A stretch of DNA of 64,000 bases, from the sequence record OM319461.1, one strand, 5' to 3'. Every line of letters begins with the position of its first letter. The first letter of the stretch is position 1. The translations under genes and the position numbers were made by a program. Positions 23,401-44,361 of this stretch are shown here, one piece after another. The notes under the pieces are model-generated. The model did no database searches. It saw only the letters and a list, made by a program, of their open reading frames with translations, and was not told the DNA's origin.

Positions 23401-26400
23401 TTAACAAGNAACACCCCATTGTGGNTGTAGTGCCGCGTTACCNGCAAAGCCCGCATTCAAGTCGAAACTTGTNGGAGCTACNGTTATCTTNGGAANACAC
23501 CANCNAGAGATNTCTTGGTTCATGCNAGGTTGCTCCAGAGAACATACCTGCCATGTNTGTAACTTCAGTAAANGTCCANGTAANAGGAANTGCATTGAAC
23601 GANGNNGCATCAGCAAACATGTAAGACATGTTCGTTNCTTTACCNGTTTGCCAGAAGTCNATNCCNNTNCCAGTAAACGCNGTTGCNCCANNGAACATTT
23701 CGCTCATNTCAAGNACTTCACCAAAGCTNAACCACANCATGTCTNGATCAAACTTAGGCGCGTTCTTNAACATTGCCTTNGCNTTNGTAATCGANNCAGT
23801 CTGTAGNGATACTNCTTGGTNAAAGATNGAAGCACCTTCNAACATAGACTCTGCGTNTTNNAGTGCNTTNGTACTTGCCCAGTTTANCATCGCNCCNTTN
23901 ACNCCNTCTGCCGAGCCGTTGTTAAACGCCACTGCATCATGGAAGATNAANGANAGGTCNGTTGCCTTNGTGAACTGAAGTGANGCTACGTTTTGGTTAA
24001 ACATTGCAGCTTCACTNAACATTTCNTTNGCAGTAGTNACATTACCNACNTCGAANGGAACNNCTTGGTTGAACGATNCNGCATGACAGAACATNCCNTT
24101 CNTACTTTCAACNNCAGCTGTATTCCAAGTCAGTGGGTTNTCACTTACACCTGGAGCNGANCCNTTGTTAAACACGAGAGCTTCTTTAAAGACGCTNGNC
24201 ATACTTATCAACNTTNGCNGTATCCCANTGATTCAANTCTTGGTTAAAGACNGAAGCACCNAGGAACATAGACNTGATGTCTGTNCCGGCCTTAGCAAAG
24301 GTCATGTTAGGCAATGGTTGGTTGAANGNCGTAGCNCTCTGGAAGACCTGGGTCTGTGNNNNAGAGTTAGCAAAGTTGATAGTCAATGGATTATCACTTG
24401 CTCCCGCNNCNGANCCNTTGTTAAACGCTGTTGCNCCATTNAACATCGAACGAACCGCNCNAACNGNNGAGAAGTCNAGGTTNTTGACGTCNTGGTTAAA
24501 CGATGTAGCATTNCTNAAGAAGAAGCTTACATCAAACGCTTTAGGGAANGTCCAGTTCGTTAGTGGTTGGTTAAACGCAGTTGCTCCNNGGAATACACCT
24601 TGCATGTATCCACCTTCCACTGTACTCCANCTNCCNACAGGCTGNTTAAAGCTTGTTGCGCCAGAGAACATGTTGTAGAAGTTAGTACAACGTGACATNT
24701 CCCATGNATCAATCTTACCNTTAAACGCGGTTGCACGTTCAAAGATAGCTGCTGCNCGAGTAGGAGCNAANCCAACCCAGCTTTCNANGTCNNGGTTAAA
24801 NGCTTTCGCATCNGTAAACACACGGTCTGCNTTTTCTACTGCTGANAGATCCCAACCAGAGATNTCTTGGTTGAAGTTTGCAGTGTCTCTNAAGATACCT
24901 GCGATCGATNTCAGATGNGCAGTTGCCCANGNTGNCATGTCACTCAGGATAAAGTCTTCACCAGNCAANGCATATTCAGCCGAAGTCGAGAANGTCATGT
25001 CAGTGTANNCNGCACGACCACCACAAGGACCAGANGGAATAGAATCATCACCAGANCCATCAGGTCTGATTACAACCGCACNCCATTTAGGTTTGTACGT
25101 GTTGCTGNTGAATTTCNTCCANAGTTCTTGACCGCCNGNATTAGCCAAGCGAGCAAAGTGNGCNTTACCGATTGTTGGGTATTCTACGATNACCTCACAA
25201 GCAGNAGTTACNCCNGCNACCTCGAAGCTTCCTCCACTAGTCANTTCTAGNGCACCAACACCATTGCTATCGACTTGGTANCTAAAGCCNTTGCCAAGAA
25301 CCGCATCNTTACCATTGNCNGTCATGTCCTCAATANAGCGAACTGTTTGACCTGCTNCNGTAACNGGAACNGTCTTAGCNNNNTCNTGCCACATGCGTGA
25401 TGTNTCTTGCATGTCGAANGCCGCTAGCATGCCTGTAGTATCGATGGTTGTTGTAGGTGCTTTAGTACAGCCTGCCATGTTAGCCCAATCAGGCAATTTC
25501 GCAGGTTGAGTAGCAATAGGTGCACCAGTCGCAAACGCGGTTGGTTCAGTTGTGATGTTTGGTACACACCAACCAGAGATATCCGCATCCATACTGTTCG
25601 CACCGCCGAACATGTTGGACATGTTGGTAGCACTACTGAAGTCCCAACAATTCAATGCCTTGTTGATACTTGTGTTACGGAAGATACGTGTAAAGTCAGT
25701 GATGTTAGAAACATCCCAGTTATCTAGGCCCTTACCAGTGAATGCCATAGCAATCCAGAATAGACCCGTTAGTTTCGTTGCTGATGGTACAAGCAGTTCG
25801 CTAACGTCCGCATCGTAGATGCTACAACGATATAGCATATCTTCATAGCTATCTAATACAGGAGCCGTCATCTTGATTGGTTGGTTTAACTTAAAACATT
25901 CTGCAAACATACGTTTAACGTTTGTAGCAGTCGGTAAGTTAAGTTCCATTGGTACGCCGACATTGTCAAACTCACGACAGTAGCCAAACATCGTATTGAT
26001 GTTATCGCCGCCGATTTGTCCGATGCCATTGATGTTTTGGTTGAACACATGACAGTGACTGAACATAAATGCCGTTGCTGTTGCATTCGATAAGTCAAAC
26101 GAACTGATGTCTTGGTTAAAGGCGTTCGCGTTGTTAAACATACTCATGAAGTTTGTACCCGCAGAGGTATCAAAGCTCAATGGTTTGTCATTACCAACAG
26201 TCGAGCCGTTGTTAAACACCTTAGCTTGCAAGAACATAAAGCTGAAGTTCGTGTTCTTACTTGTGTCCCATCCACTTAGGTCTTGGTTAAAGGCCCAACA
26301 TGCACGGAACGCCGAAGACATGTTTGTTGCGTTCTTCGTATCCCAACCTGAAACATCTTGGTTAAAGACTTTACAGTAACCAAACACACCGTTCATGTCG

Positions 26401-29400
26401 ACAACATTACCTACATCCCAATTACTTACGTCTTGGTTGAAGGACTCTGCTTCATAGAACAGTTTTGCAATAGTAGTAACTTGAGACAGATCCCATGATG
26501 TTAGAGGTACACCAGATAGGCCCGCTGCCTCGCCGTTGTTAAATTTGATCGCACCTTCCAACATAGACGCTAGGCGTGCATTACCAGCAATGTTCCAACC
26601 AGAAATATCGCGGTTGAAGGCAGCTGCATCATAGAACAAGAACTCTAAGTTAGCACCATCTTGAATTGTCCAGTTCATGTTCGGGTTATCACCGTTGTTA
26701 AACACGGTAGTTGCGCGGAACATGTTACTAAACGTAGTTACGTTACTTACATCCCAGTTGCCCACATCGACGTTCATCGAGTTAGCATCATGGAAGACAC
26801 TGATCATGTTGCTTACGCCAGACACATCCCAATCAAGTACAGAGGCTTCGCCAGGAGCTTTGCCGTTGTTCCAGTTGCGTGCGCGTTGGAACATGTTCTT
26901 GATTTCAGTTACGCCAGACATATCCCAATCAGATAGGTCGCCATTGAACTGTTCTTCGTTGTAGAACAAGTAAGCCGTACTCGTTGCTTTCGTGCCGTCA
27001 TATGTAATACATTGTTTACCACCTAGTGTGTCACCGAAGCCAGAAGCCGTAACTACAATAGGACCAAATTCTTGGCCGTTACCAAATGCACGGTTATAGA
27101 ACGAAAGTCCGGCGGCATTTGCTAAGTGTGGAATGAACGTATCACCGATGTTCGGTAGAATGAACGCAATATCTGCTGCATCAGTAATAGTCGGTACTTT
27201 TAATGGGTTGCTCAATCCGATAAAGATACACCCAGTACCATTGCTGTCTACGCCGTAACGAGCGTTGCTGCCCGAGAACTCTGCGTGGTTGTCATTACCA
27301 GACAAGTCGGTAATACCACGAACAACTTGACCTGCTGCTGTAACAGGAATTGTGCGTGCCGCATCCTGGAACAACGTACTGATGTCACGTGGGTCAAACA
27401 TAGCCAACATATTGTCAGCTGTAATACCACCGCCTGTGGTACAAGCAACACCCCAGTTTGGACCTAAGCCTACAGCGTTAACCGGAGAGTTAGTATCGAA
27501 GTTTAGAGGCTCACTAGCAATGTTGTTACCAACACACCAAGGCGAGATATTTTGACTAAAGGCTGCTGCATCACGGAACATACCCACCATGTTTGTTACG
27601 TTAGATACATTCCAACATGGCATTGGTTGGTTAAATGCCAATGCGCCACGGAACATTTCTTCCATATCCAAACAGGCTTCTGGGTTCCAACCAGATACAG
27701 ATTGGTTAAATGCCTCTGCATCCATAAACATGCGCGCCATTGTCGTCACTAGAGATACGTCCCAATGAGCCAATGACTGGTTGAATACGGCTGCACCATT
27801 AAACACGTCGCTTAGATCTGTAACAGCCGCAGGTAGTGTCATGTTACCAAGTGGTTGGTTGTATGACGCTGCTCTGTACATAAAGCCAGCCATGTTTTCA
27901 ACTTTACTGAAGTCCCAAGTATCCACGACTCCATTAAAGGCAGATGCACCACCAAACATGAAGCTCATGTCAACGACATTTTCCATTGACCATGCAGAGA
28001 TAACTTGGTTGAACTTAGCTGCATCAGAGAACATACGTTCTGTTGTAGTTGCAGTTGTCATTGTCCATCCAGTAATAGCTGTGTTGAATTCAGAAGCACC
28101 ACGGAACATATCCGAGAAGTCTTCACCGACATTCGGAGCCAACGCACTCACGTTCTGATTGAAAGCAATCGCTTCACAGAACATACCATGTAAGTTTTTA
28201 CAAACAGGTAGTACGAAAGAACTTCCGAATGCCGTATTAAATGCCCATGTACCACGGAACGCTTCGGCTACAGATAGAACTGCCGAAGTATTAATGTCAA
28301 CGGTACTGTTGAACGCTACTGCATCTTTCAGAATACGTTCGATAGTCGTTAGACTTGTGGTTGTTGTCCATGTTAATGGTCGGTTGAATGTTTGTGCGCC
28401 ATGGAACATATCGTTCATGTTTAGTGCGGCACTTACATTCCATCCAGCTACCGGTTGATCGAACACGGTTGCTCCCATAAACATTTCAGAGTAGTCAGTC
28501 ACCTTATCCATAACAAGGCTAGTTACTGGTTGGTTGAACGTAGTTGCATCTTTGAACATTGCTTTCGCAGTAGTCAATTCAGCTGTATTCCAACCCACAA
28601 GGGCACTATTGTAACTTGTAGCACCAGAGAACATAGATTCCATGGTTGTTACTTTGCTTACATCCCAAGCAGAGATGTCACCTGTGAATGCCGCAGCATC
28701 CTTGAACATAAAGCTCATGTCTGTGATAGAGACTGTAACCCAATCACTAATATCTTGATTGAATGAAGTTTCACCAGAGAACGTATGCGCCAATGAAGTT
28801 GTTACTCCGTCGGTGTATTGAATACACTCGAAGCCATTAACTGTGTTACCAGAACCAGATGCAGTAATGATCATACCAGCTAGGTTATGTGTAGCAGGTT
28901 TACCCCAATACTCGATACCAGCAGGATCTGCATCACGTTCGACAAAGGTAGTACCTACCCCAGGAATCAAGAATGCAATGTCTGCATCTACTGTGATGCC
29001 GGCCACTGTAGCCAAGGTATTGTCAGCTAACTCAATGTAACCGTTTGTACCATCTACCATGTAAGTAGCCGTACCAGTAAAGACAAGGTCGTTGCCATTG
29101 CCTGAACTATCCTCTACTACTGCGACTGTTTGACCAGCTGCGGTAACAGGAGAAGTTTTCGCTACGTCTTGGAATAGATGTTCGGTACTTGCCATTAGGT
29201 ATTGACCAAGCATGTTGTCGCCTGACGCAGTACCATTAACACATACTTCACCCCAACGTGGCTTATTGCCTGCCAATGCATCTAGTGCAGAGTCTTTGGC
29301 AAAGTCAGTCGGTTCTGACGGAATAGAGTTTACACACCAACCGCCGATGTAGCGATCAAAGTCTGTTGCTCCAGAGAACATCTCAACCATTGTTGTAATT

Positions 29401-32400
29401 GATGCTGTGTTCCAACAACCGATGTTTTGGTTGAAGGCACTTGCACCTGCAAACATACCCGAAGCGATTGCGACGTTAGAAACATCCCAAGTGCCAATAG
29501 GCTGGTTGAAAGCAACTGCGTTACGGAACATGTCTTGGGTAGTTTCTGCCGCAGACATACTCAAGTTACGTAGTCCAATGTTCAAACTAGCACAATCGCG
29601 GAACAATCCAGTAAACGTAGTTACTGTAGATGTGTTCATCGTTGCGTCTACACCGCCGTTGTTTAACAGAGCACAGCCAGCGAACATTTCTGTTACGTCA
29701 GTCACACCAGTTAAGTCATAAGACAATACGGCCGCATTTAGTTTAGAACAGTCTTTGTACATACGTTCAGTTGAAGTAACACCAGAGAAGTCCGGAACAG
29801 CCAACACTGCATTCAAGTCAGTACAGCCTTCGAACATACCAGTTACTTTGGTCAACGATGACATGATAAAGGTCATTGTACCTAGAACACCAGGCGCTTT
29901 ACCATTGTTAAACTTCACAGCATCGCGGAACATGTGCGTTGTGTCAGTAACAGCATTGAAGAGAACCGTATCGATCGATTGGTTAAAGTTACTTGCACCA
30001 TCAAATGCTTCTACAGCACTGTCTTTAATCATAAAGCCAGTAATGTCACAGTTGAAGGAAGCTGCATCTTTAAATACACGCTCGAACGAAGTCAATGCCG
30101 GAGTTGCCCATGGCATTGCTGGACCTTCTGAACCACCCAATACACCGTTGTTAAATGCCGAAGCACCATTAAACGCATCGTTGATTCGTTCAACCTTAGC
30201 AGGAATCCAAGATACAATCGAGCCGTTAAAGGACGTTGCGTCTTTGAAGATTGCTTGCATGTTAGTTACTTCGCGTACATCCCAGCCACCGATGTTACAG
30301 TTAAAGCCAGAAGCACCCTCGAAAGCACTACTCATGTTTTGCACGGTTGACGTATCCCAGTTTAATACTGGGCCTGCTGTACCTGCACTTGCGCCCGAGT
30401 TAAATTCCGGAGCAAGATAGAACATACTCGCCATGTCGAACAGGACACTAAATGTCCAGTCAGATACATTGCCGTTAAAGTTCGTTGCACCACGGAACAT
30501 AAACGATGTGTTTCCACAAGACGTCAAGTCCCATCCATCTACTTTCGGATTCATTTCTGAACGTGCAAACATACCACTAGCAGTAACAACTTTGCTCATG
30601 TCAAAGCCAGTTAGATCTGGATTCCAAACACCGGTATTGGCAAACATGCTCGTTACCGAAGTAACTTTGCTTGTGTCAAAGTTGGTTAGTTCACCAGACA
30701 TTGCCTTGGCACCGTCGAACATGTTGTTCATTGTACCAGCTGCTGTTGTCGTCCAACCGGATAGGTCAGAGTTAAACAATGCTGCACCTTGGAATGTTCC
30801 GTTAAAGTCAATAACCTTACTTACATCCCATGTCGAAACATCAGCTGTGCCTTCTGAATTCTTAAAGGTATCTTTAAGAGAAACCACATCAGCAGTATTC
30901 CATGTTGATAGATCTGCTTTGATTGCTTTCGTATCTTCAAATAGATGCGCTAGGTTAGTAACTGTTACACCAGAGAATGCCGTACACTCTGCACCAGTAA
31001 TCGTATCACCAGCGGCTTCTGTTGTGTACAGAATCTGAGAAACAACCAACTGCTCAGCTTTACCCCAGAATTCACCGTTACCAGATGTATCTTCGATTGT
31101 AACTACAGCCGAACCTACCGATGGGATTGTGAAGCCCACATCAAATCGATTCATACCGATAGTTGCTACTTGAAGACTTACTGTAGACGGTACGATCAAG
31201 TAATGTAAACCATTGGTGTCTTTCTTAAGTGTTGCAGTACCGCCAACAAACACACCGTGATTACCATTGCCTGACATGTCTTCTAGAGCTGCTACAGCAC
31301 CGTCAACGACTGCCGGAGTAGTACGTGACGCATCAGAGAACAAACCTTGTCCATCGACAATCGGGAAGACTGCCTGAGTATCTGCCGAACCTAGAGAACC
31401 AGGTAGACATGTACCCCATGGTGGAAGTTGTCCTGCTGTTAAGCCAGAGTTTGTCGAGAACCCTGATGGCGTTGAACTGATCTTAGGTACACACCAGCCA
31501 GACAGAGATTGACTAAAGCTAGTAGCGCCTTCGAACATAATGTCCATCCGGAATGCTTCTGGTGTTTTCCAACAAGTCAATGGTTGGTTAAACAGTTTCG
31601 CATTTTGGAACATGTTGTTCATGCGTTCTGCACTAGTCACATTCCAACTGCCAACCGGGGAGTTGAATGCTTCGGCATCAGTGAACATGAAATCAAAGCG
31701 CTTAACGTTTCCAACATTCCATGTTAACGGATTGCTATTGTCACCAACTGCTGCACCGTTATTGAACATTGTTGCTTCTTTGAACATATGGTTCATACCA
31801 ACAACGTTGCTCAAGTCCCAAGCATTTAGGTTCTGGTTAAACGCAGTGTTCATTGAGAACATGTAGTCAGTTGCAGTAACGTTAGACATATCCCACGCAG
31901 AGATATCGTGGTTCCATGTACTTAAGCCGAACATAGATTCAGTAGTTTCGAACGACGTGGTTACCCACTTGTCCAAAGGCTGATTAAACGCGGTAGCTTC
32001 GTAGAACATACCACCTGGGTTGGTGATAGTAGAAACATCCCATGCGTTCAGTGGTTGGTTGAATGCCGTTGCTGCCGTAAACATGTAGCTCGCATCTAGC
32101 ACGCCATTCATGTCCCAGCTACTGATGTCTTGGTTAAATACTTTCGCGTACGAGAACATGTAACTTGTATCAGTTGCTTCGGTAGTCTTCCAGTTACTTA
32201 GATCTTGGTTGAATGCCTCTGTGGATTCAAACATGAAACTAAAGACTTGTACTTTGCTTACATCCCAGTTGTTTAGCGGCTGGTTAAAGTTCGTACAGTT
32301 TGAGAACATACCAGAGATCGATGTTGCCGAACTCATGTCCCACATGTCTAAAGGCTGATTGAAGTTTGAACAGTTAACAAACATCCAATCAAATGTTTCA

Positions 32401-35400
32401 ACCTTGCTTACATCCCAATGCGATAGATCTTGGTTAAAGTCAGCTTCGTCACCAAATAGCGATTCTAGTGATGTTACTGTACCCTCTGCATAAGCCGCAC
32501 AATCAAAGCCACGAATGGTATTACCCGAACCTTGTTCAGTAATGATGATTGCACCTACATACAGATCTGCCCTTTTACCCCAGAACTCAACTGGACCAGC
32601 AGTACGAGAAACAAACGAGTCACCTACCCCTGGAATCAAGAACGCAATGTCATGACCAGTATTGATAGATGCTACTTCTATTTTCGCATTTTCTTTTACT
32701 TCAAGATAACCCAAGCCATTTACATCTTGACGGTAAACCGCATTGCCACCAGTAATGACAGCATGGTTACCATTACCTGAAACGTCGGCGATTGCCTTAA
32801 CAACATCACCAGGCGCAGTAACCGGAATAGTACGAGATTCATCTTTAAATAGAGAACTCATATCCATCGGGTTAAGGTTGGCCAGTTTGTTATCTGCCGA
32901 TACACCACCAGGAGGACAAGTACTCCACTGTGGCTGTACGTTTGCTTGGTTAACAAAGCTAGCTGGCGCACCAGTATCAAATGCTTCTGGTTTCGATGTG
33001 ATGTTTGTTACACACCAACCGGATAGGTCTTGCTCAAATGCACCTGCATCATGGAACATATGATCCATTAGGTTTGCACTTGTTGTTTTCCAACAGTTAA
33101 TGCGTTGGTTAAAGGCAAGCGCTTCGTGGAACATCCATGAGAAGTTACCTACCTTAGAAACATCCCAGCGACCGATAGGTTGGTTGAAGTTATCTGTTTG
33201 CTCGAACATGTTCGTTACGTTAACAGCAGACGAAGTATCCCAAGAGCCAATAGCACCATTAAAGATGCGTGCACCAGAGAACATCGCAGTAAACAGTTCT
33301 ACCTTGCCAGTATCCCATGTAGAGATATTACCAACAAAGTTTTCTGCATTCTGGAACGTAGAAGCCATGTCAGTAACAGATGACGTATCCCAGTTAACTA
33401 GGTCTTGACTAAACGCTGTAGCTCCTTCGAACATACTGCGGATAGTTGTTACCCCAGTCATTGTCCAACTGTCAAGTGGTTTGTTGAATGCAATCGCACC
33501 ACGGAACATTCCGGATGTGTTAGTACAAGCCGCCAAGTCCCAAGTATCTAACGGTTGGTCAAATACACGAGCATTGCGGAAAGTATCTTGCATTGCAACA
33601 ACATTACTTACATCCCAGTTGTTTAGTGGCTGGTTGAAAGAATGTGCATCTTGGAAGGTTCCCACCAATACACGCAGTGCGGTAGTAGTCCACCCACCGA
33701 TGTTTTGGTTAAACGATACTGCACGATTAAATGCCATCGCCATACTGGTAACTTTTGAAACATCCCACGTTGAGATATCTTGGTTGAATGCAGCAGCGCC
33801 CATGAAGATTGCCTGCATGTTAGTTAATACAGTAGTCGTCCATGTTAATGGTGCTGAGTTTGCACCTGCCGTTTCACCGTTGTTAAATGCTACTGCTCCA
33901 GCGAACATACCTTCCATCGTCACAACAGAAGAAACAACCCAGCTAGAGATATTCGCATTAAACGAACTAGCACCAGCGAACATACCAGATGTTGTTACTG
34001 CTGAACTCATATCCCATGCACTAATATCTTCGTTGAAGTTTACTGCGTTTTGGAATGTGCCTTCAAAGTTAGTTACACCTGTTGTGTTCAAGCCCGCTAG
34101 GGTACCGATGTTGTCTTCACCAGCAAACAAGTTTTGGAATGTTGTATTTCGGTTAGTGTAAGTTGGACCACACGAACCCATTGCCGTTCTCAGTGCTGCT
34201 TCATCAGCAGTACTCGGAGCAATCGTAATCGCCGAAACAAGGAAGGCCTCATCGCGATCTTCGCCAAAGATTTCACCTGTGGCTGTGTCACGAACAATTG
34301 AAACAATACCGTTGTTTACTAGGTTGAATACAATTAATGCACCGTCATTCATTCCGCCATATTGGATCGATTGACCATCGGCGAACTCTAGGTAACCATT
34401 ACCGTTTGCATCTTCACGATAAGTTGGAGCACTTGAAGCTTCACCCCACACCACATCATTGCCGTTGCCTGAACTATCTTCCAATAGCATTACCTTTTGA
34501 CCAGAAGTAGTTACCGGAGTAGTACCTGCTGCATCTTGGTAGAACCATTGTTTTTCAAAGCCAAGGTAAGTAGCAATAGAACCAGCTGCTGCCAAACCAC
34601 GTGAACAATCAGAACGACATGGATCTGGTGCTAGGCCCCATTGTGGTGGATTAGCTACATTAACAGCACCGAACAGATTTGGCTCTGCTGGTATATGCTG
34701 TACATCCCAACCTGCAAGATATGCGGTCATTGCATCAGCACCGTTAAAGAGGTTCGTCATGTCGGTTACGTTACTCACGTCCCAACGACAAAGCATCTTG
34801 TTGAATGCAGTTGCGAATTCAAACATACCGCGCATCGCTGTAAATGCAGAAGTATTCCACTTCTCAAGTTCGTTCACGCCACCGTTATCATACGATGTTG
34901 CGTTACGGAACATGTTGGTTACATTAGCAACTTTTGCCATATTCCAGTTGGCTAGGTTTTGGTTAAATGCGGATGCACCGTGGAACATAGATTCCATTGT
35001 GGTCACATTGCCAACATTCCAATTGCCAATCGGTTGGTCAAACACAGAAACAGACGAGTTAGAGTAGAACATAAAGCTCATGTCTGTTACGTTGCCAGTA
35101 GACCAATCAGAAACGTTCTGGTTAAACGCACGAGCGTCTTGGAACATTCTGTGTAGCGATGTAACGTTTGCTACTGTAAAGTTACCTGATGCCTCTGTGA
35201 GAGGCTGTAAACCATTGTTAAACGCATAAGCACCACGGAATAGTGAGTCCATTAGTGTTACACGAGCAGTATTCCAAGTTGCAATGTTCTTGTTGAATGC
35301 ACGAGCATCCATGAACATACCAGTCATGTTAATCGCAGAAGCACCTGTATAGAACACCCAGTTGCTTACGATAGCATTGAAGTTCAATGCTGCTTGGAAC

Positions 35401-38400
35401 ATGTGAACAAAGTTAGTACATGCAGACCAATCCATGTTAGCCATAGATGAACTTGCATTGTTAAAGCGACTTGCATCTTTAAACGCACCTTCGGCAGTTG
35501 TTACCGCAGCAACATCCCATCCGGCGATATTTTGGTTAAAGTTACTTGCCCCTTCGAACATATAACTGATGTCAGTTACTTTGCTCATATCCCAAGGTAA
35601 TGGCTGGTTAAATGCCGTTGCGTTTTTGAACATCCATTTTGTTGTCGTTAGTGCTGAGGTTACCCAGCTTGACATTGGTTGGCCGTACGCAGTTGCTCCT
35701 TGGAACATCCCCATTGCGTTTGTTAGTGCCTGTACATTCCACGCATCAATCGACTTGTTAAATGCACCCGCATCTTTAAATGCATAGGTAGCGTTTGTTA
35801 GTTTGCCTGTGTTCCATGCTGATAGATCCAGATTCATAGAAGCACAGCCGTTGAACATTGACTGGATCGAAGTAACTTCACGCATGTCCCATGTTTGCAC
35901 ATCGACATTATTAAAGTTCAAGTTACCAGAGAAAAAGTCGTTCATCGTTGCCTGAGTATTAGCCGCATAAACTTTAGCACGTTGTGACATCGTGTTATTA
36001 GCAGACGTCTTAGATGCTGAGTCTAGTGTTGTGGCAATACCTGCCATATCGGTTAGTTTGTGCACACCGACTGCGTTTGGAGTAAAGTAACGCTTAATAC
36101 CTTTACCGCCATAAAAGTCGATGTTGGTTGTTGTCATCTTACCACGGCCAACTACACCGATGATGTGATCCGCACGGCCATTGTAATCCACTACCATGTC
36201 GTGGTTAGGGCCGAACTCAAGATAACCAATGCCATTATCGTCTTCACGGTAGATCGGACGCTTAGCGTTATCTGGTTGTTGTAGATGACGTAGGTTACCA
36301 GTTAAGTCCATTATGAACGCAACAGGGTCACCCGGGTTTGCCACTGGGATTGTACGACCGATATCTTGCCACATGCAGTCTTTATCAGAACCACTATGGA
36401 AGAACTCAGAACGCTCAGTTAGACAGAAGCCACCCCAATAAGGTTGTTTTGCTGCATCGCCAGCCATACCTGCACCAGCATCAAAGTCAATTGGCTTAAC
36501 TGAGATTTGCTGTACACACCATCGAGAGATATCTTGGTCGAATGCAGTTGCACCATCAAACATATAGTCCATGGTCAAAACAGCACTTACGCGCCAATCG
36601 CCAAGGTCAGAGTTAAATAGTGGAGCCGAACGGAACATGTTTGTCATGTTCGTTACTTTGCGAACATCCCATGATGACAAGTCGCTGTTGAATAGCAATG
36701 CACCATAGAACAAGTCAGCCATAGAAACAACACTGCTTGTATCCCAACCACTCAAGTCAGAAACAAACTTAGCCGCACTCGTAAACGTACCCATCATAGA
36801 AACAGGAACATCTGTACGGATTGTCCATCCAGACAAATCAGACTCGAAGTTACTACAGTCTTTGAAAGCACGGTTAAAGCTACGTACCTTTGACGTTACC
36901 CAGCCACGCAAGTCAGACGTAAATGAGCTAGCACCATGGAAAGCATCATCCAAGAATTGTACATTGTCAGTTTTCCAACCAGACAAATCTTGATTGAATG
37001 CAACGGCACCCATAAACGTTTCTGTTAAGTCACCGACAATTGTCGTATCCCATCCAGAAATATCCTCATTGAATCGAACTGCACCTTTAAACAAACCACG
37101 CAAAGAAGCAATTGAGTTCAGACGGAAGTTAGACATACCGCCAGTTGCGTATTCTTCGTTTGCTAGCAAGTAAGAAATACTGCTTTGTAGTTCGGTCGTA
37201 TATGCGTCTGCACGTAACTGCATTGCATCACGGATAGAGCTTAGTTCTTGTGCTGTAAGTGCTGTGTCGGTTGCCACTGCCTCACCGGCCCAAATCCAAA
37301 CCTTTTCAGAACCACCTGCTGCCTTGATACCAAGTTTAGCTGGTCCATTTGGTTGGCCTTCCCATTGAGGAACACCGCGTCCAGCGATTGCCACCCAGTT
37401 ACGAGAACTGTCAGTAATCGAAGGCACAACAAAATGCTCATCGTTCGTGAAGACTAAGTAGCCGCGGCCGTTTACATCTTCTTGGTAAAGAGGACGTTTT
37501 GTTACATCTGCCTGAATACCATTGTTACCCTTACCAGAGATATCCCCGATAAATGCAACGCGCTCACCAGGAGCAGGTACACCAGAGCCATCTACGTTAA
37601 TGCCTAGTAGCTGTTTGATAGATGGATCATAATAACCATCCAACAATTCGCCCACACAAGGCTGGCCGAACAGAGGAACTTCTGTAGCATCCAGTTGACT
37701 GCTAACACCAAAGTCTACTGCTTCATCCGGAGTCACGTTCTTAACACACCACGTAATCAGGTTGTGATTAAACATGTATGCATTGTTGAACATGCGCATC
37801 ATACTTGTAACGTTTACTGTATCCCATAGAGAGATATCGTAGTTAAAGATAGATGCTTCACGGAACATTTCGTCCATGAGGATTTCAGAAGCATTAAACT
37901 GCCACGTAGCGATGTTATGGTTAAACGAGTCAGCTCCATAGAACATACCACGGAAGTCAGTAACGGCTTCTACATTCCAATTATCCAGGTCTTGTGCAAA
38001 GTCCTCGGCATCACGGAACATAAAGCGCATCGTTTTCGCAGACGACGTATCGAAGTGATTCAAAGGCTGGTTAAACACAGGCGTTGACATGAACATGCCT
38101 TCGAAGTTTTCTACGTTCGTAGTAACCCAGCTTGTTAGCAGTTGGTTAAATACTTCTGTGTTTTGGAACATACGTGCCATGTTACTGGCACTACTTGTAT
38201 CCCACCCCAATAGTGGTTGGTTAAAGCGAACCGCACTGCGGAAAGCTTCTTTAAATAACGTTACGTTACTTACATCCCAATTACCAATCGGTTGGTTAAA
38301 CTGACGGGCATTGAAGAACATACCTTCCATTTTCAGAAGTGAGGACGTATCCCAAGCAGTAATGTCACCGTTGAAGTCTGTTGCGTTTTGGAACATATAA

Positions 38401-41400
38401 GAAGCATCAAGCAATGCACTCATGTCCCAAGGCAGAGGCTGATTGAAATCAACAGCATCTTTAAACATACCGACCGCAGAGCGCAACGAAGAAGTATCCC
38501 ATGACGCCATTGGACGATTGTAGATTTCACAACCCGAGAACAGAAAGTCTGCATGTACAACACCAGACATGTTCCAGCTATCAATATCCCAGTCAAACTC
38601 CGTACGGTCTTCTAGAGCACAGCTAATATCACTTACTGCGCCAGGGGCGTAAAGTTTTGCCCAGCGACCTGCGGCTTTTGAAAGAACCAGAATATCAGTA
38701 GCAATCGGAGCACCGAAGTAAACAATCAACTGACCCATCTTGCGGGTAGCGCCTGCTTTTTCACGTGCTTTGAAATCAATCTTGAACGTAGTAGATGGAA
38801 CCGTAATGTAGTCACCCCAACCACCAACAGATGGAATGTTGTTAACCCATACACCAGTGCCAGAAACACCACTAACTACCAACTCGGTACTATCAGGGAA
38901 TTCAAGGTAACCTAAACCATCGGCGTCTTGACGATAAATCGGACGTTTTGCAACATCAGGTTGAATCGCATCCAAGCCTAGTTTACCGATGTCTTCTAAA
39001 ACAGCTACGCGATCACCAGGAACCGGGTTTGTTGTCTTAGCTTCGTCAGTAAATACTTTTGTGACGTCACCGGCATCATACCACAAGTCAGCCAAGTCAG
39101 CCAAACAGCGAGCACCCCAGATAGGCATGAAGTCAGACTGTAGCGGAGAACCAAACGAGAACATCGTTGGACCAGTTACCGGAATCTGCTTAACACACCA
39201 TGGAGTCAAGTCTTGGTTAAACACTGTCGCATTAAAGAACATGCGATCAAAGTCAGTAACCGTTGTTGTATTCCAGTTAGCCAAGTCTTGGTTGAAGACA
39301 AGGGCTGATTGGAACATCATTTTAAATGTCTTAGCCGATTCAGTACGCCATAGATTAAGTGGCTGGTTGAATGCTGCCGCACCAGAGAACGTACGATAGA
39401 AAGTTTCTACAAAACGCACATCCCAAGATTGAATCGGTTGGTTAAAGGCAATTGCCCCATCGAACACGCCGGCCATGTTGGTAACTGTAGTAGTAACCCA
39501 GTTATCCAATGATTGGTTGAATGCTACACTACCAAAGAACATTTCTTCGATTGTTAAAGCAGCTGACAAATCAAAATGATTCAGAGCACTATTGAATACA
39601 ACGGCACGTGCAAAGGCACGCTTAAAGTTTTCGACGCCAGAAGTATCCCACGTTGTCAAATCAGAGTTAAATTGATTCGAGTCTTCAAAGATCGATTCAA
39701 TGCTTTTAACTGTCGGACCAATCAAGTCAGCAACTGAGCTATTAAACAACGATGCTGCTTTAAATGTCGCCACTGCACTTTCAAGTACAGGAGCTGGACC
39801 AACCAACGGACGATTGAACGTTGCCGCACCGTGGAACATGCCATCGATCGTAATTGTCGATGAAAGATCAAAAGGTACTTGGCTATTGAACGCACGAGCG
39901 TCTTTGAACATATGTGCAAACGTAGTTACTTTTGCAGTATCCCATGGAAGATCGTAATTGAAAACCGAAGCGCCTTCAAATACACTTTCCATGCTAGTTA
40001 CATTAGACGTGTCCCATCCACCGATGTTTTGGTTGAATGCCTTAGCGCCAGCAAAAGCAAAGTCCATCTTTTCAAGCGACGTTGTTACCCAGCCAGAGAT
40101 ATCTTGGTTGAAAACTAACGTGTCTTTGAATAGGCCGACAATACTCTTGACCATGTCCATTTTCCAGCCAGAGATATCTTCATTGAAAGTATTCAAACCT
40201 TCTAGATAGTAATCCAGGCTAGTTACAGTACCTTGGTCGTAAAGAGTATAAGACTCTCCAACATACTCACTTGCCACGAGTTTCATCTCTGGCGTACAAG
40301 TATCTGCAAGAGCTACGAATTGACCGACGTAACGTTTTTGTTCTCCGGCTACACGAGGACCGATTGTTGTATCCGTATCGGTTACATGCAATACACCGAT
40401 ACCAGGGATAGTTTCCCACGTATGGTAATTATCACCGCCGTCTTGGTAAGACATGAACTCATCGTTATTGAATTCCAAATAGCCATTACCGTTAACGTCT
40501 TCGCGATAAGTCGGAGCAGTAGCCAATGCCGCCGTAGCGTGATTGCCTTTTGTTGTCAAGTCCAGCATCAAGCGAACTTTGTCGCCAGGCGTGGTAACCG
40601 GTACTTTACCTTCGGTATCTTGGAACAATGTACCAATCAAGTTAGCATTGTAAAAAGAATGTGCAAAGTACTTAAGACATGGCATTGCCCACTGAGGTTG
40701 CAACGCATCCACATCCTGCCAGCCAGCCTGTGTGTTATCATCAAAGCCATTTGGCTCATCAAGAATTAAACGCACACACCAAGCAGAAAGGTCGTATGAG
40801 AACGAACTAGCGCCTGAGAACATCTCAACCATATTTGTAGCTAAGTCAGTTTGCCACAGTGAGATATCTTGATTGAAAGCAGCTGCACCACGGAATGCTG
40901 CATTGAAGTTTGTTACCTTGCTTACATCCCAAGTAGTAACATTACCATCAAACACAATCGCGCCATCAAAGATACCGGCCATGCTTGTTACATTGCCAGT
41001 TTCAAAATGATCGAGGTCTTGATTGAACTTAACTGCACCCGCTGCGAAGTAACTCATGTCAGTTACATCATGAGTACGCCATCCAGTTAGCGGCTGGTTA
41101 AACTCAAGAGCACCACGGAACATAGCAGTCAGTTTTGTTGCACGTGATAAACGGAAGCTAGTTACAGGTTGGTTGAATACAGCCGCCCCGTCAAACATAT
41201 AACTAACGTCAGCCGTCAGACCTAAATCCCATCCAGAAAGCGAGCCATTGAATGCTACTGCACCCTGGAACATCTGAGACACGTCTGAAACACCGAACAT
41301 TTCCCAGTTAAAGAGATGCTGGTTAAATGCAACCGCATTGCGGAACATAGCTTTCGCTACTTTTAAGTTTGCGAAGTCCCAGTTGTTTAGCGGTTGGTTG

Positions 41401-41600
41401 AATGCACTAGCACCGTCAAACATACTTGTTGTATGCGTAACAGTCTGCATGTCCCATGACTGAATCGGCTTGTTGAACAATGTCGCACCGGCAAACATAG
41501 ATGACAAGTTTGTTTTACCAAAGAGCTGCCAATGAGCAAGGTCTTGATTAAACTCTGTGTCATTTAGGAATATGTATGCCAAAGAAGCAATCGTGTCAGA
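23401..41600 (-). repeat. DUF285 / PARCEL-type 25-27 aa repeats in 11 blocks
   Basis: Recurring MF..A..FNQ.L..WDVS.VT.M units; roughly 150 by length estimate, not counted. Confidence 0.9.
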
Positions 41601-42599
41601 TGGATAGCTATTGATAGCAAGTTCGTTGACTTCATCAAAGATCCCATTGAGTTCGTCGTCAAGTATATCTTGAGTCAAGAACAATACTTCGTTTAAGTTC
41701 CATGTTTTGTTTTCGCTTGGGAAGCGTGGGCCGATGCGATGCTCAGTAATGTCTTTGTCTTGGTTGAAGTAAGCCAAAGCACCAGTACCAGGAACACCCA
41801 GAATCTCATGTACTGCGGCTTTGTTTTCCGGAGTCTTTAAGATAAGGTGTTGGTCACCTGAGAAACGAATATAGCCGCTACCAGTTGCATCTTCAAGATA
41901 CGTCGGTTTTAGGTCGGCATCGTCCTGACGCAATACTGCATCACCGACAATGGACTTAACAAGACCTACTCGGTCACCGGCCTTACATGGCACACTGCCT
42001 TCACCATCAACAAAACAAACAAGGTCTTGATTGAATTGGAAGCGATAGCCACTATAGCCCTTTTCAAAATAAGCATCCACTTCACCCATGTTTTCAAACG
42101 GGTCGAATGCTTCTGGTACACCGCCCAAAAGAACGAACGCACCTTCTTCGATAGTTTCAAAGCGCTCTTCGCCTAAAACGTCCAGGTAGACAGTAGCAGA
42201 GTCAATATGACGCCCACTTGTAACTGCGGTCCACTGGACTGGATCAAATACACCAGCCTCTACCGGACGATTAGTGCCGAGTAGATTACCCAGCGCATCT
42301 AAAACGAAACTGTCTTCTTCGTAGTCACGCATAGGTTCATGACGTGCAACAAAGCCAGTTTGTAAAACTATCTCTTCCCATGCTTCTGGATTAAATTCTC
42401 CAGCCAGGATAAGTTTCTTTGAACGATAAACTCGATCATCATGAAAAACATAGCTTCCTTTTTGGAAGTTGTATGTAGGCAGGAAGTTAGGTATCGTGGC
42501 AGGTACGTCTTGCGCATTACGGTCTGCCCAGATAATCCAGTTTGTTGAATCCTGACTTCCTTGATGATGGAACAATCGAATAATGGTTGGTAAAGCCAT
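23401..42599 (-). CDS. giant (about 6,400 aa) modular DUF285/BspA-like repeat protein, putative virion fibre or adhesin
   Basis: 6137-aa ORF 24186-42599 with a GGAG site. Repeats continue in ORF 23438-24211 after a one-base shift (GTT-G-ATA-AGT-ATG) and then in the frame of 23401-23616, ending with the same cap motif (NQ.IS.WC...PQWGV.C-stop). Confidence 0.85.
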
Positions 42600-42611
42600 T
42601 AGTATTCTCCG

Positions 42612-44258
42612 TTAATATGTAATATGGACAATAGTGCCCGAGGACCAAAGATTTTTTCCATACGTTAGATTGAACGACGGGAAGAAGTACATCGTCTTGA
42701 TAACTTGTCTTGGGCTAATTTTTTCCCAGTTACCTTCCGAGTACGGACCAAGGCTACTTGCCTTTTTATGTCGAACAATTTCTTCGGATGGATCGAGGAC
42801 GAACATGTCCGGACTATATTGCATGTTTGCATTATGTTTCGGCACCAAGGCCGTTCCGGTTTGTAGTTCCTCCCAGTCTCGAAGGTCCCAAATTGAACCA
42901 CCGACTATCTCTGATAGCACAGTAGTAAACTTTTTCGTAAGTGTGTCCCACCCAAGGATACTAGGAGTACCTGTAACGCCCGCTGTGAGGTAATTACAGA
43001 CAACCGAATAGATTACACCATCGGATTCAAAGACACTCCACTGAGACGGACCTTGCGTCACAATGCCTTTGAATGGAACAAACGTTTCTGAAATTGCATC
43101 CCAAAAGAAGGTAACCGATAACGAGTCCGTATTGTTTTCACTTGTGCGGAAAACCGGAACGTTCATATAAAGGACATCGCCTTCTTCAAAGAAAGAAAGA
43201 TTGAGTACGGTACCACGTATGTTCGTGTCCGTACCTTTGTGGTCAAACTGGTCAGTTAAATCACGAACCGGAGACAAAGCTCCATTGTCGAACTTAACCA
43301 GTTTTAACCAATTGCTTTTTGTAGCCAGTATCCCATAGTAGCGACTATCAATCTCACGATAAGCAAAATGAGTTACTTGGTCATCGACAACATAGTCATC
43401 GACAAATCGCAGTGTTTTTGTTACATTGTCAAACAAGAGCGTTGACATCGTTGTCTTTCTACGATACTCATCATAACGAGCAAACGTAAGATAGATATTA
43501 CCTGCAATTACCTGTGTGGTCACATGCATTACTCGTTCAGTATCTTCGATCGTATATGTCGATACTGACTGTACTGTTTTTGACAACGGGTTAAACTGTG
43601 CAATGCTGATTTCTTGTTGTCCGTGCATCCCACTTACCAGGAAGTGTCGAGTACCCAGAGAAAAATAATAAAGAAAGTCGCAGGCTGCAAACTCAACGTA
43701 TGGTTCTAACACACCAGCATCAGTCAACTCATAGATTTCCGTTTTCGCTGTTTGTAACTTACCGGGAGCTCCGGTAATGAATACGCGTTCTCGGTCATGG
43801 ATTGCCACGATGTCTTCTAGTGCATGCGTCAGAGTATGAGTCAGTGTCAAACTACCCGTGGTATTGTCCCAGGCATAAACATAAAGATTACCCCCACCAA
43901 CAGAGGTAGGTGGTACTTCTTGATATTCTACTCGACGTGACAGTATGTTGTTTGAACTTAAAAGGAACTGTTTTCCTTTTACAGTAATAACTTGTGCATC
44001 GTTGATGAACCCTGGATTAGGATATGCGATGGTCGTTAGTTCTGGACGTGCGTAACCCTGCTTGGGTGTATTTTTACAAAACAGTAAAGTTGCTGCATTC
44101 AGAGAGATAACGTCATCGGGCTTATAGCTTTTGGTTGGATCAAAAGGACCGATTTCTTTCGGTCTAGGTAACAATGACCCTTCTGTCCATACTACATAAG
44201 GCAATGGCTTTAAGCCCTTGTCTTCTTTGTGTAATCGGACCGTATACTTACAGAACAT
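42612..44258 (-). CDS. beta-propeller protein (EAR/EPTP-like) with CBM-like terminal modules
   Basis: Likely start MFCKYTV at 44258 after GAGGA (548 aa). Blade-like motifs QGPSQWSVFESDGVIYSVVCNY...SILGWD...KF and CDFLYYFSLGTRHFLVSG. Confidence 0.6.
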   Translation of the reverse strand: MFCKYTVRLHKEDKGLKPLPYVVWTEGSLLPRPKEIGPFDPTKSYKPDDVISLNAATLLFCKNTPKQGYARPELTTIAYPNPGFINDAQVITVKGKQFLLSSNNILSRRVEYQEVPPTSVGGGNLYVYAWDNTTGSLTLTHTLTHALEDIVAIHDRERVFITGAPGKLQTAKTEIYELTDAGVLEPYVEFAACDFLYYFSLGTRHFLVSGMHGQQEISIAQFNPLSKTVQSVSTYTIEDTERVMHVTTQVIAGNIYLTFARYDEYRRKTTMSTLLFDNVTKTLRFVDDYVVDDQVTHFAYREIDSRYYGILATKSNWLKLVKFDNGALSPVRDLTDQFDHKGTDTNIRGTVLNLSFFEEGDVLYMNVPVFRTSENNTDSLSVTFFWDAISETFVPFKGIVTQGPSQWSVFESDGVIYSVVCNYLTAGVTGTPSILGWDTLTKKFTTVLSEIVGGSIWDLRDWEELQTGTALVPKHNANMQYSPDMFVLDPSEEIVRHKKASSLGPYSEGNWEKISPRQVIKTMYFFPSFNLTYGKNLWSSGTIVHITY

Positions 44259-44328
44259 GGTTTTGTTCCTCGTCTTAAAAATGGCCTGTCTAATAAATTT
44301 GCCAAAAGCATAAATAAAGAAATNCCCC

Positions 44329-44344
44329 CTGGCCNGATGGCCAG
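44329..44344 (-). terminator. probable intrinsic terminator
   Basis: ctggcc-ngat-ggccag with A-rich sequence on its left, after the helicase stop. Confidence 0.55.
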
Positions 44345-44361
44345 AGGAGNATTNCAGAGGT

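What the first reader, a model, noticed from the sequence alone, without database searches (positions are those of the whole stretch)
42225..44258. Shared anchor platform: a propeller is inserted into the module that begins the giant protein
Seen: the giant N-terminus reads IPNFLPTYNFQKGSYVF...AGEFNPEAWEEIVLQTGFVARHEPMRDYEEDSFVLD...GVFDPVQWTAV. The upstream 548-aa protein reads IGPFDPTKSYKPDDVISL...[about 400-aa EAR/EPTP-like propeller]...IWDLRDWEELQTGTALVPKHNANMQYSPDMFVLD...GPYSEGNWEKI. The two genes are 12 nt apart. Established: EAR/EPTP repeats form seven-bladed propellers and are best known from animal LGI1 and TSPEAR. Inference: two paralogues use one docking module with different payloads, suggesting a modular appendage system.
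Basis: partly seen in the sequence, partly recalled or inferred. Interest (0 to 1): 0.65.

Follow-up and report, generated by a model that had tools for sequence, protein, structure and literature searches.

The report
Propeller inserted in phage fibre anchor
In a giant Vibrio phage, a 548-residue protein and the 6,137-residue repeat protein encoded 12 bases downstream start with the same tail-fibre-type attachment module, and in the small protein a seven-bladed propeller is inserted into a loop of that module: an unusual variant of the known design in which one anchor carries different host-binding parts.

Summary
The window is Vibrio jumbo phage C-ZP2022. The 548-aa gene (42615-44258, minus strand) ends 12 nt before the 6,137-aa DUF285 giant.

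- **Shared module.** Both halves match in order: giant residues 4-62 align with 548-aa residues 4-63, and 67-139 with 455-527. With the insert removed, hhalign gives E 2e-14 and a score of 88; column shuffles reach at most 17.
- **Insert.** The roughly 390 residues in between fold confidently as a seven-bladed propeller. Human LGI1 EPTP is the top structural match (Z 29.1), only slightly above WD40 propellers. Pfam EPTP matches 5 of 6 family members, but below threshold for this protein.
- **What the module is.** It is an N-terminal arm plus two CBM5/12-like mini-domains. These are a common tail-fibre building block. The closest solved relatives are the baseplate-anchoring N-termini of Agrobacterium phage 7-7-1 gp015 and Milano gp124.
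The order helicase, ~550-aa gene, giant is conserved in 8 of 8 lineages. C-ZP2022 has five module carriers. One, CZP2022_27, has a different ~395-aa insert in the same loop. Relatives elsewhere carry DUF285, GH18-like or GDSL payloads.

The docking-module reading is supported by homology. Virion location is untested. Earlier scan notes had already called the heads of the pir03 and sm033 giants tail-fibre-type. I rate this a new variant of a known kind.

The parts
42612..44258 (-). Gene for the 548-aa protein (CZP2022_116), stop codon included
   Evidence: ORF and translation. It is 100% identical to the annotated hypothetical protein of Vibrio phage C-ZP2022. Eight family members of 547-557 aa are known.
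44070..44258 (-). N-half of the shared module (aa 1-63): the N-terminal arm plus the beta-hairpin of the first CBM5/12-like repeat
   Evidence: hhalign against giant residues 4-62: E about 4e-6, score 32.7, against a shuffled maximum of 14.3. Against the N-terminus of the CZP2022_27 family: E 1.2e-7.
42897..44069 (-). Inserted seven-bladed, EPTP-like beta-propeller (aa 64-454; confidently folded core 85-445)
   Evidence: AF2 pLDDT 80-90 with about 30 strands. Foldseek top 7 hits are all LGI1 EPTP, E 1.6e-13, TM 0.76. VIA-align Z 29.1, rmsd 2.6 A, 307 aa. Pfam EPTP matches 5 of 6 members, best E 5.4e-5; this protein scores 16.2 bits, below the 21-bit cut-off.
42678..42896 (-). C-half of the shared module (aa 455-527): last strand of repeat 1 plus the whole of repeat 2
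   Evidence: hhalign against giant 67-139: E 5.6e-9. On cut-outs: E 2.9e-13, score 70.9, against a shuffled maximum of 19.8. An HMM of the giant module finds it at E 1.2e-10.
42615..42677 (-). Short C-terminal tail (aa 528-548). The protein ends here, with no distal shaft or tip.
   Evidence: Translation and family alignment.
42600..42611 (-). 12-nt intergenic spacer containing GGAG, the ribosome-binding site of the giant
   Evidence: Sequence. The spacing is 11-25 nt in all eight lineages.
24186..42599 (-). Giant 6,137-aa DUF285/BspA-repeat protein (CZP2022_115)
   Evidence: ORF. Pfam DUF285 E 1.5e-42 from residue 317. The pir03 orthologue has 6,417 aa.
42495..42599 (-). Giant N-terminal arm (aa 1-35)
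   Evidence: Conserved in all giants. Aligns with the N-arm of the 548-aa family and of CZP2022_27. AF2 predicts strands at residues 6-11 and 18-25.
42207..42494 (-). Giant CBM5/12-like repeats 1 and 2 (aa 36-131), uninterrupted
   Evidence: Internal repeat, hhalign E 4.6e-7. pLDDT above 90. Profile hit to 9rkv_M residues 27-120, E 8.9e-4. Foldseek top hits are 8fqc and 9rkv, followed by Vibrio COD CBM12 and ChiB ChBD.
41850..42182 (-). Third N-terminal domain of the giant (aa 140-250). It is shared with CZP2022_27 but absent from the 548-aa protein.
   Evidence: hhalign of P0010 458-624 against giant 69-248, E 2.5e-7. Also found alone in small proteins.
23438..24211 (-). Detached C-terminal end of the giant, split off by an N-rich, low-quality stretch
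   Evidence: BLASTP against the C-terminus of the pir03 giant, E 2e-94, with many X residues from N bases.

Best explanation
Both genes encode virion appendage proteins of the tail-fibre class. They share an old N-terminal attachment module made of a roughly 35-residue arm and two small CBM5/12-like beta domains.

In the giant, the module is followed by a third small domain and then about 11 DUF285 (LRR-like) units, giving a very long host-binding fibre. In the 548-aa protein, a seven-bladed EPTP-like propeller has been inserted into the loop between the hairpin and the last strand of the first mini-domain. The chain stops about 20 residues after the module, so the propeller is the only payload and is held close to the attachment site.

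By analogy with the solved Milano and 7-7-1 fibres, the arms would reach into the baseplate or sheath junction and the mini-domains would form the proximal stalk of a trimer. The propeller's N and C ends lie side by side, which is what allows it to sit in a loop.

Shown here: the shared split module, the propeller fold, the homology to solved fibre N-termini, the conserved gene pair and the other carriers. Inferred: virion location, trimer state, the docking role and ligand binding by the propeller.
For: - Colinear profile match of both module halves: E 2e-14 with the insert removed, well above shuffle, reverse and off-target controls.
- The propeller model is confident and best matched by seven-bladed propellers, with LGI1 EPTP first in both aligners. 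Pfam EPTP matches 5 of 6 members.
- The module profile hits 7-7-1 long tail fibre gp015 residues 27-120 (E 8.9e-4) and Milano gp124 (E 0.06).
- The AF2 model of the giant N-terminus (pLDDT 82) has these two as its top Foldseek hits.
- The papers state that gp015 residues 1-120 anchor to the baseplate core (PMC12796354). [quoted passage not shown]
- The module is N-terminal in several proteins per genome: five carriers in C-ZP2022, and four consecutive genes in sm033.
- In metagenomic relatives the module precedes DUF285, GH18-like or GDSL esterase payloads, which are typical of receptor-binding or depolymerase proteins.
- CZP2022_64, another carrier, matches PHROG tail-fibre families.
- The gene pair is conserved in 8 of 8 lineages, down to 21% identity.
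Against: - No virion proteomics or structure exists for this phage group. The pir03 paper has none.
- The neighbouring genes are a helicase, DprA and nucleotidase on one side and a terminase fragment on the other, not a tail module.
- The PDB sequence match is modest (E 8.9e-4). Global TM scores are low because the models are elongated.
- The two core repeats are generic. They also form long internal arrays in other fibres, so on their own they do not prove a docking role.
- The module parts of the 548-aa model have pLDDT below 50, so it is not shown that the split domain refolds around the insert.
Confidence: 0.62

Rival explanations
1. The module is a working carbohydrate-binding unit (CBM5/12 proper). 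It would bind chitin or a host surface glycan rather than dock the proteins on the virion. The shared N-termini would then be shared ligand binders.
For: The module repeats are profile-level relatives of repeats that pass Pfam CBM_5_12. The model matches the CBM12 domains of Vibrio chitin oligosaccharide deacetylase and the chitin-binding domain of Serratia ChiB (44 aa, rmsd 2.0 A). The hosts are chitin-associated vibrios. Some relatives carry GH18-like payloads.
Against: The module itself gets no Pfam CBM_5_12 hit even at E 10. It sits at the extreme N-terminus and always follows a conserved arm. The nearest solved relatives are fibre N-termini seen in place on baseplates. In tail fibres these repeats act as shaft units.
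Confidence: 0.14
2. The 548-aa protein is not an independent appendage. It would be a co-subunit or adaptor of the giant, with the two homologous modules assembling into one mixed oligomer, for instance a heterotrimeric anchor. That would explain why the small gene always lies directly upstream.
For: Adjacency at 11-25 nt spacing holds in 8 of 8 lineages, down to 21% identity. The small protein contains little beyond the module and the propeller. DUF285 solenoids have no obvious need to trimerise (my inference).
Against: There is no direct evidence. The complex prediction could not be run. Other carriers of the module, such as CZP2022_27, _64 and _73, have no such partner next to them. The solved relatives are homotrimers.
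Confidence: 0.12
3. The proteins are not part of the virion. They would be made in the infected cell, for example as secreted or surface adhesins or for an intracellular role, and the similarity would reflect reuse of a common fibre repeat.
For: The genes lie among replication and nucleotide-metabolism genes. No proteomic data exist.
Against: The similarity covers the N-arm and both repeats in the same order, not just a generic repeat. The module sits at the N-terminus in many paralogues, with payloads typical of receptor-binding proteins. It is homologous to fibre N-termini solved in place. Structural genes are commonly scattered in jumbo phage genomes (my own knowledge).
Confidence: 0.08
4. 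The similarity between the termini is chance, or the insert is not a propeller.
For: Pairwise BLASTP of the N-halves alone is not significant (E 0.17). Pfam EPTP is below threshold for this protein.
Against: Profile scores are 2 to 5 times the best shuffled score. The family is conserved in eight lineages. The propeller model is confident, with Z 29 matches.
Confidence: 0.01

Closest known systems
Long tail fibre gp015 of Agrobacterium phage 7-7-1 (PDB 9RKV) and tailspike gp124 of phage Milano (PDB 8FQC)
   Same: The N-terminus has a short arm followed by small beta domains that match the module in sequence (E 8.9e-4 over 94 residues) and as the top fold hits. In both phages this region attaches a trimeric receptor-binding protein to the baseplate or sheath junction. 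A variable payload follows.
   Different: Their payloads are a beta-helix plus a jelly-roll, not DUF285 units or a propeller. No domain is inserted in the module. The cysteine network of Milano is not conserved here. The hosts and phage groups are unrelated.
CBM5/12 chitin-binding domains (Pfam PF02839), and their tandem arrays in phage tail fibres (PHROG 9851 and 972)
   Same: The roughly 45-residue repeat has the same fold (ChiB ChBD rmsd 2.0 A, Vibrio COD CBM12). Module repeats tile proteins that pass Pfam CBM_5_12 and PHROG tail-fibre models.
   Different: The module itself does not reach Pfam CBM_5_12 at any listed E-value. There are only two copies, fixed at the N-terminus behind a conserved arm. 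Sugar binding is untested.
EPTP/EAR seven-bladed propeller of human LGI1 (PDB 5Y2Z, 9KZC)
   Same: It is the best structural match in both aligners (Foldseek E 1.6e-13, TM 0.76; Z 29.1, rmsd 2.6 A over 307 residues). Weak Pfam EPTP matches occur in 5 of 6 family members.
   Different: Identity is 10-12%. This protein is below the Pfam cut-off (16.2 against 21 bits). Generic WD40 propellers score only 1.5 Z units lower. There is no LRR partner domain. Here the propeller is an insert in a phage fibre module, not a C-terminal domain of a secreted animal protein.
Multi-fibre phages whose receptor-binding proteins share N-terminal attachment domains (CBA120 TSP1-4, G7C, phi92)
   Same: Several proteins in one phage share related N-terminal domains and carry different distal payloads. 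The Milano paper likens its N-terminal domains to those of CBA120 TSP1 and TSP3.
   Different: In those phages the payload follows the anchor. Here one paralogue, and a second in CZP2022_27, carries a large domain inside the anchor. The comparison with G7C and phi92 rests on my own knowledge and was not tested.

Membership tests
EPTP/EAR repeat propeller (Pfam PF03736) | Score at or above the Pfam gathering cut-off of 21 bits | tested here: not met
   P0003 scores 16.2 bits, E 0.011. Five of six family members match at E up to 1, best E 5.4e-5. A profile of the family does not hit LGI1 sequences in the PDB.
EPTP/EAR repeat propeller (Pfam PF03736) | Seven-bladed beta-propeller fold closest to a solved EPTP domain | tested here: met
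   About 30 strands between residues 85 and 445. LGI1 EPTP is first by Foldseek (E 1.6e-13; the next family is at 3e-9) and by VIA-align (Z 29.1 against 27.5 for Ski8). The margin over WD40 propellers is small.
CBM5/12 (Pfam PF02839) | Sequence match to the Pfam model | tested here: not met
   No CBM_5_12 hit for any of six module sequences at E up to 10. Related repeats in other fibres do pass.
CBM5/12 (Pfam PF02839) | Small three-stranded beta fold like solved chitin-binding domains | tested here: met
   Foldseek matches to ChiB ChBD (44 columns, rmsd 2.0 A, probability 1.00) and to the CBM12 domains of Vibrio COD. Model pLDDT exceeds 90 over residues 30-130.
CBM5/12 (Pfam PF02839) | Binding of chitin or another glycan | not testable with these tools
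   Needs a binding assay.
Tail-fibre or tailspike N-terminal attachment module (Milano gp124 / 7-7-1 gp015 type) | Homology to the solved N-terminal region | tested here: met
   hmmsearch against PDB sequences: 9rkv_M residues 27-120 at E 8.9e-4, 8fqc_P1 at E 0.061. The top four Foldseek hits are these chains.
Tail-fibre or tailspike N-terminal attachment module (Milano gp124 / 7-7-1 gp015 type) | Position at the extreme N-terminus, followed by a variable payload | tested here: met
   Giant, SM033_00002, SM033_00003 and about 15 metagenomic clusters start with it. Payloads are DUF285, GH18-like and GDSL.
Tail-fibre or tailspike N-terminal attachment module (Milano gp124 / 7-7-1 gp015 type) | Trimeric protein attached to the baseplate in the virion | not testable with these tools
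   No proteomics or structure for this phage group.
DUF285 / BspA-like repeat proteins (Pfam PF03382), for the giant | Score above the Pfam cut-off | tested here: met
   144.6 bits against a 25-bit cut-off within the first 500 residues.

The most novel reading that the evidence does not exclude
The 548-aa protein and the giant may co-assemble through their homologous modules into a mixed anchor, for example a heterotrimer. A single 700-kDa DUF285 chain would then be mounted on the tail beside propeller-bearing partner chains. The loop of the first mini-domain would be a general display site into which this phage lineage has twice placed roughly 390-residue domains.
Probability: 0.12. Interest if true: 0.8.

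Novelty: new variant of a known kind. Interest (0 to 1): 0.52.

Why it matters
Shared N-terminal anchors with exchangeable tips are the accepted design of phage receptor-binding proteins. Large domains placed inside the anchor are not part of that picture.

Here the same loop of a tiny CBM5/12-like domain holds a seven-bladed propeller in one protein family. In a second family it holds a different insert of about the same size. The first family is always encoded directly before a 0.7-MDa fibre. That gives three things:

- a defined, testable handle on how jumbo vibriophages mount their giant DUF285 proteins;
- a natural example of a permissive display loop in a fibre anchor;
- a structural look-alike of the animal EPTP propeller in a phage.

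These phages infect the aquaculture pathogens Vibrio harveyi and V. parahaemolyticus. Knowing which proteins are host-binding appendages helps in understanding their host range.

Tried and rejected
- **The genome search 'own':** no genome is held for this window. I searched the three phage records through their loci instead.
- **PHROGs on the 548-aa protein:** no family.
- **Pfam on the module:** only noise, DUF5758 at E 0.03-0.19.
- **PDB sequence search with the 550-family profile:** no LGI1 hit, only a WD40 protein at E 0.75.
- **Word-based homologue search, with the single protein and with the profile:** only the six close members. The two divergent members came from the exhaustive search.
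- **Insert against insert:** the CZP2022_27 insert compared with the 548-aa propeller gives hhalign probability 1.4%, so no detectable similarity.
- **Protein atlas look-up of the CZP2022_27 insert:** no usable hit.
- **Complex prediction (548-aa protein with giant residues 1-250):** There is therefore no verdict on binding.
- **Chance similarity:** rejected.
- **Recent duplication:** rejected as the source of the shared module. The halves are only about 17-21% identical, and the split form is conserved in lineages that are themselves only 21% identical.
Full report
**Identity of the window.** tblastn of the 548-aa protein finds a 100% match in Vibrio phage C-ZP2022 (OM319461, 287.9 kb, host V. 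parahaemolyticus). It also finds 88% identity in vB_pir03 (host V. harveyi) and 38% in vB_VpaM_sm033. Window position equals record position minus 62,000, and the genes of interest lie on the minus strand. The 548-aa gene is CZP2022_116 and the giant is CZP2022_115. Both are annotated as hypothetical proteins.

**Checking the observation.**
- The ORF list shows the giant at 24186-42599 (6,137 aa) and an upstream frame at 42612-44393.
- The first 45 codons of that upstream frame run through N-containing sequence. The real start is the ATG at 44258, which gives 548 aa like all orthologues.
- The stop and the giant's ATG are 12 nt apart, with GGAG in between.
- BLASTP of the two proteins aligns 548-aa residues 462-522 with giant residues 74-134 (25% identity, E 3e-5). 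The N-terminal stretches score only E 0.17.

**Profile comparison of the two termini.** I collected the small family and the N-termini of the adjacent giants from six genomes and compared profiles.
- Giant 67-139 matches 548-aa 455-527 at 95.9% probability, E 5.6e-9.
- Giant 4-62 matches 548-aa 4-63 at E about 4e-6.
- With the middle of the small protein cut out, a single colinear alignment of 135 columns scores 88.1, E 2e-14.
- Forty column shuffles never exceeded 20. Reversed profiles and windows from inside the propeller scored no better than 15.

The module really is split in the small protein, by an insert spanning residues 64-454.

**The insert.** AlphaFold2 on the six-sequence alignment gives a confident all-beta core (residues 85-445, pLDDT mostly 80-90, about 30 strands). 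The module parts stay below pLDDT 50.
- Foldseek against the PDB puts seven LGI1 EPTP chains first (E 1.6e-13, TM 0.76 on the target). The next hit, a designed Kelch-type propeller, is at 3e-9.
- VIA-align gives LGI1 Z 29.1 (rmsd 2.6 A, 307 residues). Ski8, Trm82 and SF3B3 propellers follow at Z 26-27.5.
- Pfam EPTP is below the cut-off for this protein (16.2 against 21 bits). It matches five of six family members, best E 5.4e-5.
- The family profile does not reach LGI1 by sequence.

I conclude that the seven-bladed propeller is secure and that EPTP kinship is likely but unproven. Propellers as such are common in phage proteins.

**What the module is.** It contains an internal repeat: giant 41-79 against 89-128, E 4.6e-7. 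An exhaustive profile search with the first 250 residues of four giants gave 222 proteins at E up to 0.001.
- Many of these proteins have up to 18 matched stretches.
- Nine of the ten top hits scanned carry arrays that pass Pfam CBM_5_12, and six of the ten match PHROG tail-fibre families 9851 and/or 972.
- In nine of nine checked proteins, the module repeats overlap the Pfam CBM_5_12 stretch and tile the protein with a period of about 45-48 residues.

The core is therefore two CBM5/12-like mini-domains, a general tail-fibre building block, preceded by a conserved arm of about 35 residues.

**Closest solved relatives of the module.** The module profile hits two PDB sequences:
- the long tail fibre gp015 of Agrobacterium phage 7-7-1 (9rkv_M residues 27-120, E 8.9e-4);
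- the tailspike gp124 of phage Milano (E 0.061).

An AlphaFold2 model of giant residues 1-250, built on 20 sequences, has mean pLDDT 82 and exceeds 90 over the repeats. Its top Foldseek hits are these same two proteins. Next come the CBM12 domains of Vibrio chitin oligosaccharide deacetylase and the chitin-binding domain of ChiB.

The 7-7-1 paper states that residues 1-120 of gp015 mediate anchoring to the baseplate core (PMC12796354). [quoted passage not shown] Its 25-residue arms contact sheath and wedge proteins, and its globular domain spans residues 26-120 (PMC10811340). This is the main support for the docking reading.

An HMM of the module was searched in the three phage records.
- **C-ZP2022** has five carriers: the giant, the 548-aa protein, CZP2022_27, CZP2022_64 and CZP2022_73.
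- **CZP2022_64** (331 aa) also matches PHROG tail-fibre families.
- **sm033** has the 553-aa orthologue, then the giant, then SM033_00002 (535 aa) and SM033_00003 (1,165 aa). All four follow one another and begin with the module. The giant wraps around the end of the linear record.
- **Ten metagenomic relatives** with an N-terminal copy of the module were scanned. Their payloads are DUF285 in seven, GH18-like in two and a GDSL/SGNH esterase in one.

**A second insertion in the same loop.** CZP2022_27 has 1,227 aa and is annotated as a BspA family protein.
- Its residues 18-64 match giant 16-62 (E 7e-8).
- Its residues 458-624 match giant 69-248 (E 2.5e-7).
- DUF285 repeats follow.

The roughly 395 residues in between occupy the same loop as the propeller of the 548-aa protein, at giant positions 62-69. 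They show no detectable similarity to that propeller (probability 1.4%). Their fold could not be determined. Uninterrupted repeats are the rule in the proteins I examined, so the split form is the derived state.

**Conserved pairing.** The six close family members all lie in the order helicase, ~550-aa gene, 11-12 nt spacer, giant. Two divergent members found by the exhaustive search (21% and 26% identity) show the same order with 22-25 nt spacers. Their giants start with the same module at 100% probability. That makes eight of eight lineages. The two modules within one genome are only about 17-21% identical, so the duplication is old.

**Mechanism proposed.** Both proteins are tail-fibre-class appendages that use the arm and mini-domain module as their proximal, tail-binding end. 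The giant extends from it as a long DUF285 fibre. The small protein ends just after the module and presents a propeller from a loop of the first mini-domain, close to the attachment site. Virion location, trimer state and ligand binding are inferences.

The main rivals are these:
- the module binds sugar rather than the tail;
- the two proteins form one mixed assembly;
- they are not virion proteins.

**Earlier notes of this scan** describe the pir03 and sm033 giants as having a tail-fibre-type head piece, and describe DUF285 solenoids on tail proteins of other jumbo phages. My own tests of the head piece agree. I did not test the notes on other phages.

**Novelty and score.** No paper in the held library links EPTP or DUF285 with phage fibres, apart from the pir03 genome paper. 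Shared anchors with variable payloads are a known design. A large domain inserted within the anchor, found twice in the same loop and always paired with a giant fibre gene, is a new variant of it. Interest is moderate at 0.52.

Noticed in passing
Outside the window: OM319461 16958-20641 (L015:6959-10642, minus strand), CZP2022_27: A 1,227-aa BspA/DUF285 protein has the same module, split at the same loop by a different insert of about 395 aa. The third domain and DUF285 repeats follow. It amounts to a single-chain version of the 548-aa-plus-giant design.
   Followed up: partly
window 23438-24211 (-): A 257-aa ORF rich in X residues is the C-terminal end of the giant (E 2e-94 against pir03). 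Scattered N bases cut it off, so the true giant has about 6,390 aa, close to the 6,417 aa of pir03.
   Followed up: partly
window 44330-44420 and 44362-46409 (-): There are scattered N bases just upstream of the 548-aa gene. The DEAD-like helicase, intact at 656-689 aa in relatives, is split into three ORFs in C-ZP2022. This is probably assembly quality rather than biology.
   Followed up: no
L001 21674-36481 and L017 13-7539 (phage sm033): The sm033 giant runs off the end of the linear record and continues at its start as SM033_00001. The 3' portion, about 14.8 kb, is unannotated. Two further module-bearing genes follow it directly.
   Followed up: partly
Outside the window: OM319461 49364-61523 (L016:9365-21524, +): A block of ten plus-strand genes holds five paralogues of about 430-465 aa that match phrog_6368. 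It is bracketed by the module carriers CZP2022_64 (tail-fibre PHROG hits) and CZP2022_73, and may be a fibre or baseplate gene cluster.
   Followed up: partly
window 41850-42182 (-), giant aa 140-250: A third N-terminal domain is shared with CZP2022_27. It also occurs alone at the start of many small proteins of 244-302 aa in metagenomes. Its fold and role were not examined.
   Followed up: no
window 55749-56663 (-) and 22080-23045 (-): The annotated 'glycohydrolase' matches endolysin and chitinase-like PHROGs. A 321-aa ORF matches only the N-terminal part of the terminase large subunit.
   Followed up: no
L004 72-1364 and L005 1-5105: In metagenomic relatives, a weak GH18-like gene lies a few genes upstream of the pair. 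L005 also has a 1,515-aa protein there with weak BclA_C and Kelch hits, which suggests further fibre-type genes nearby.
   Followed up: no
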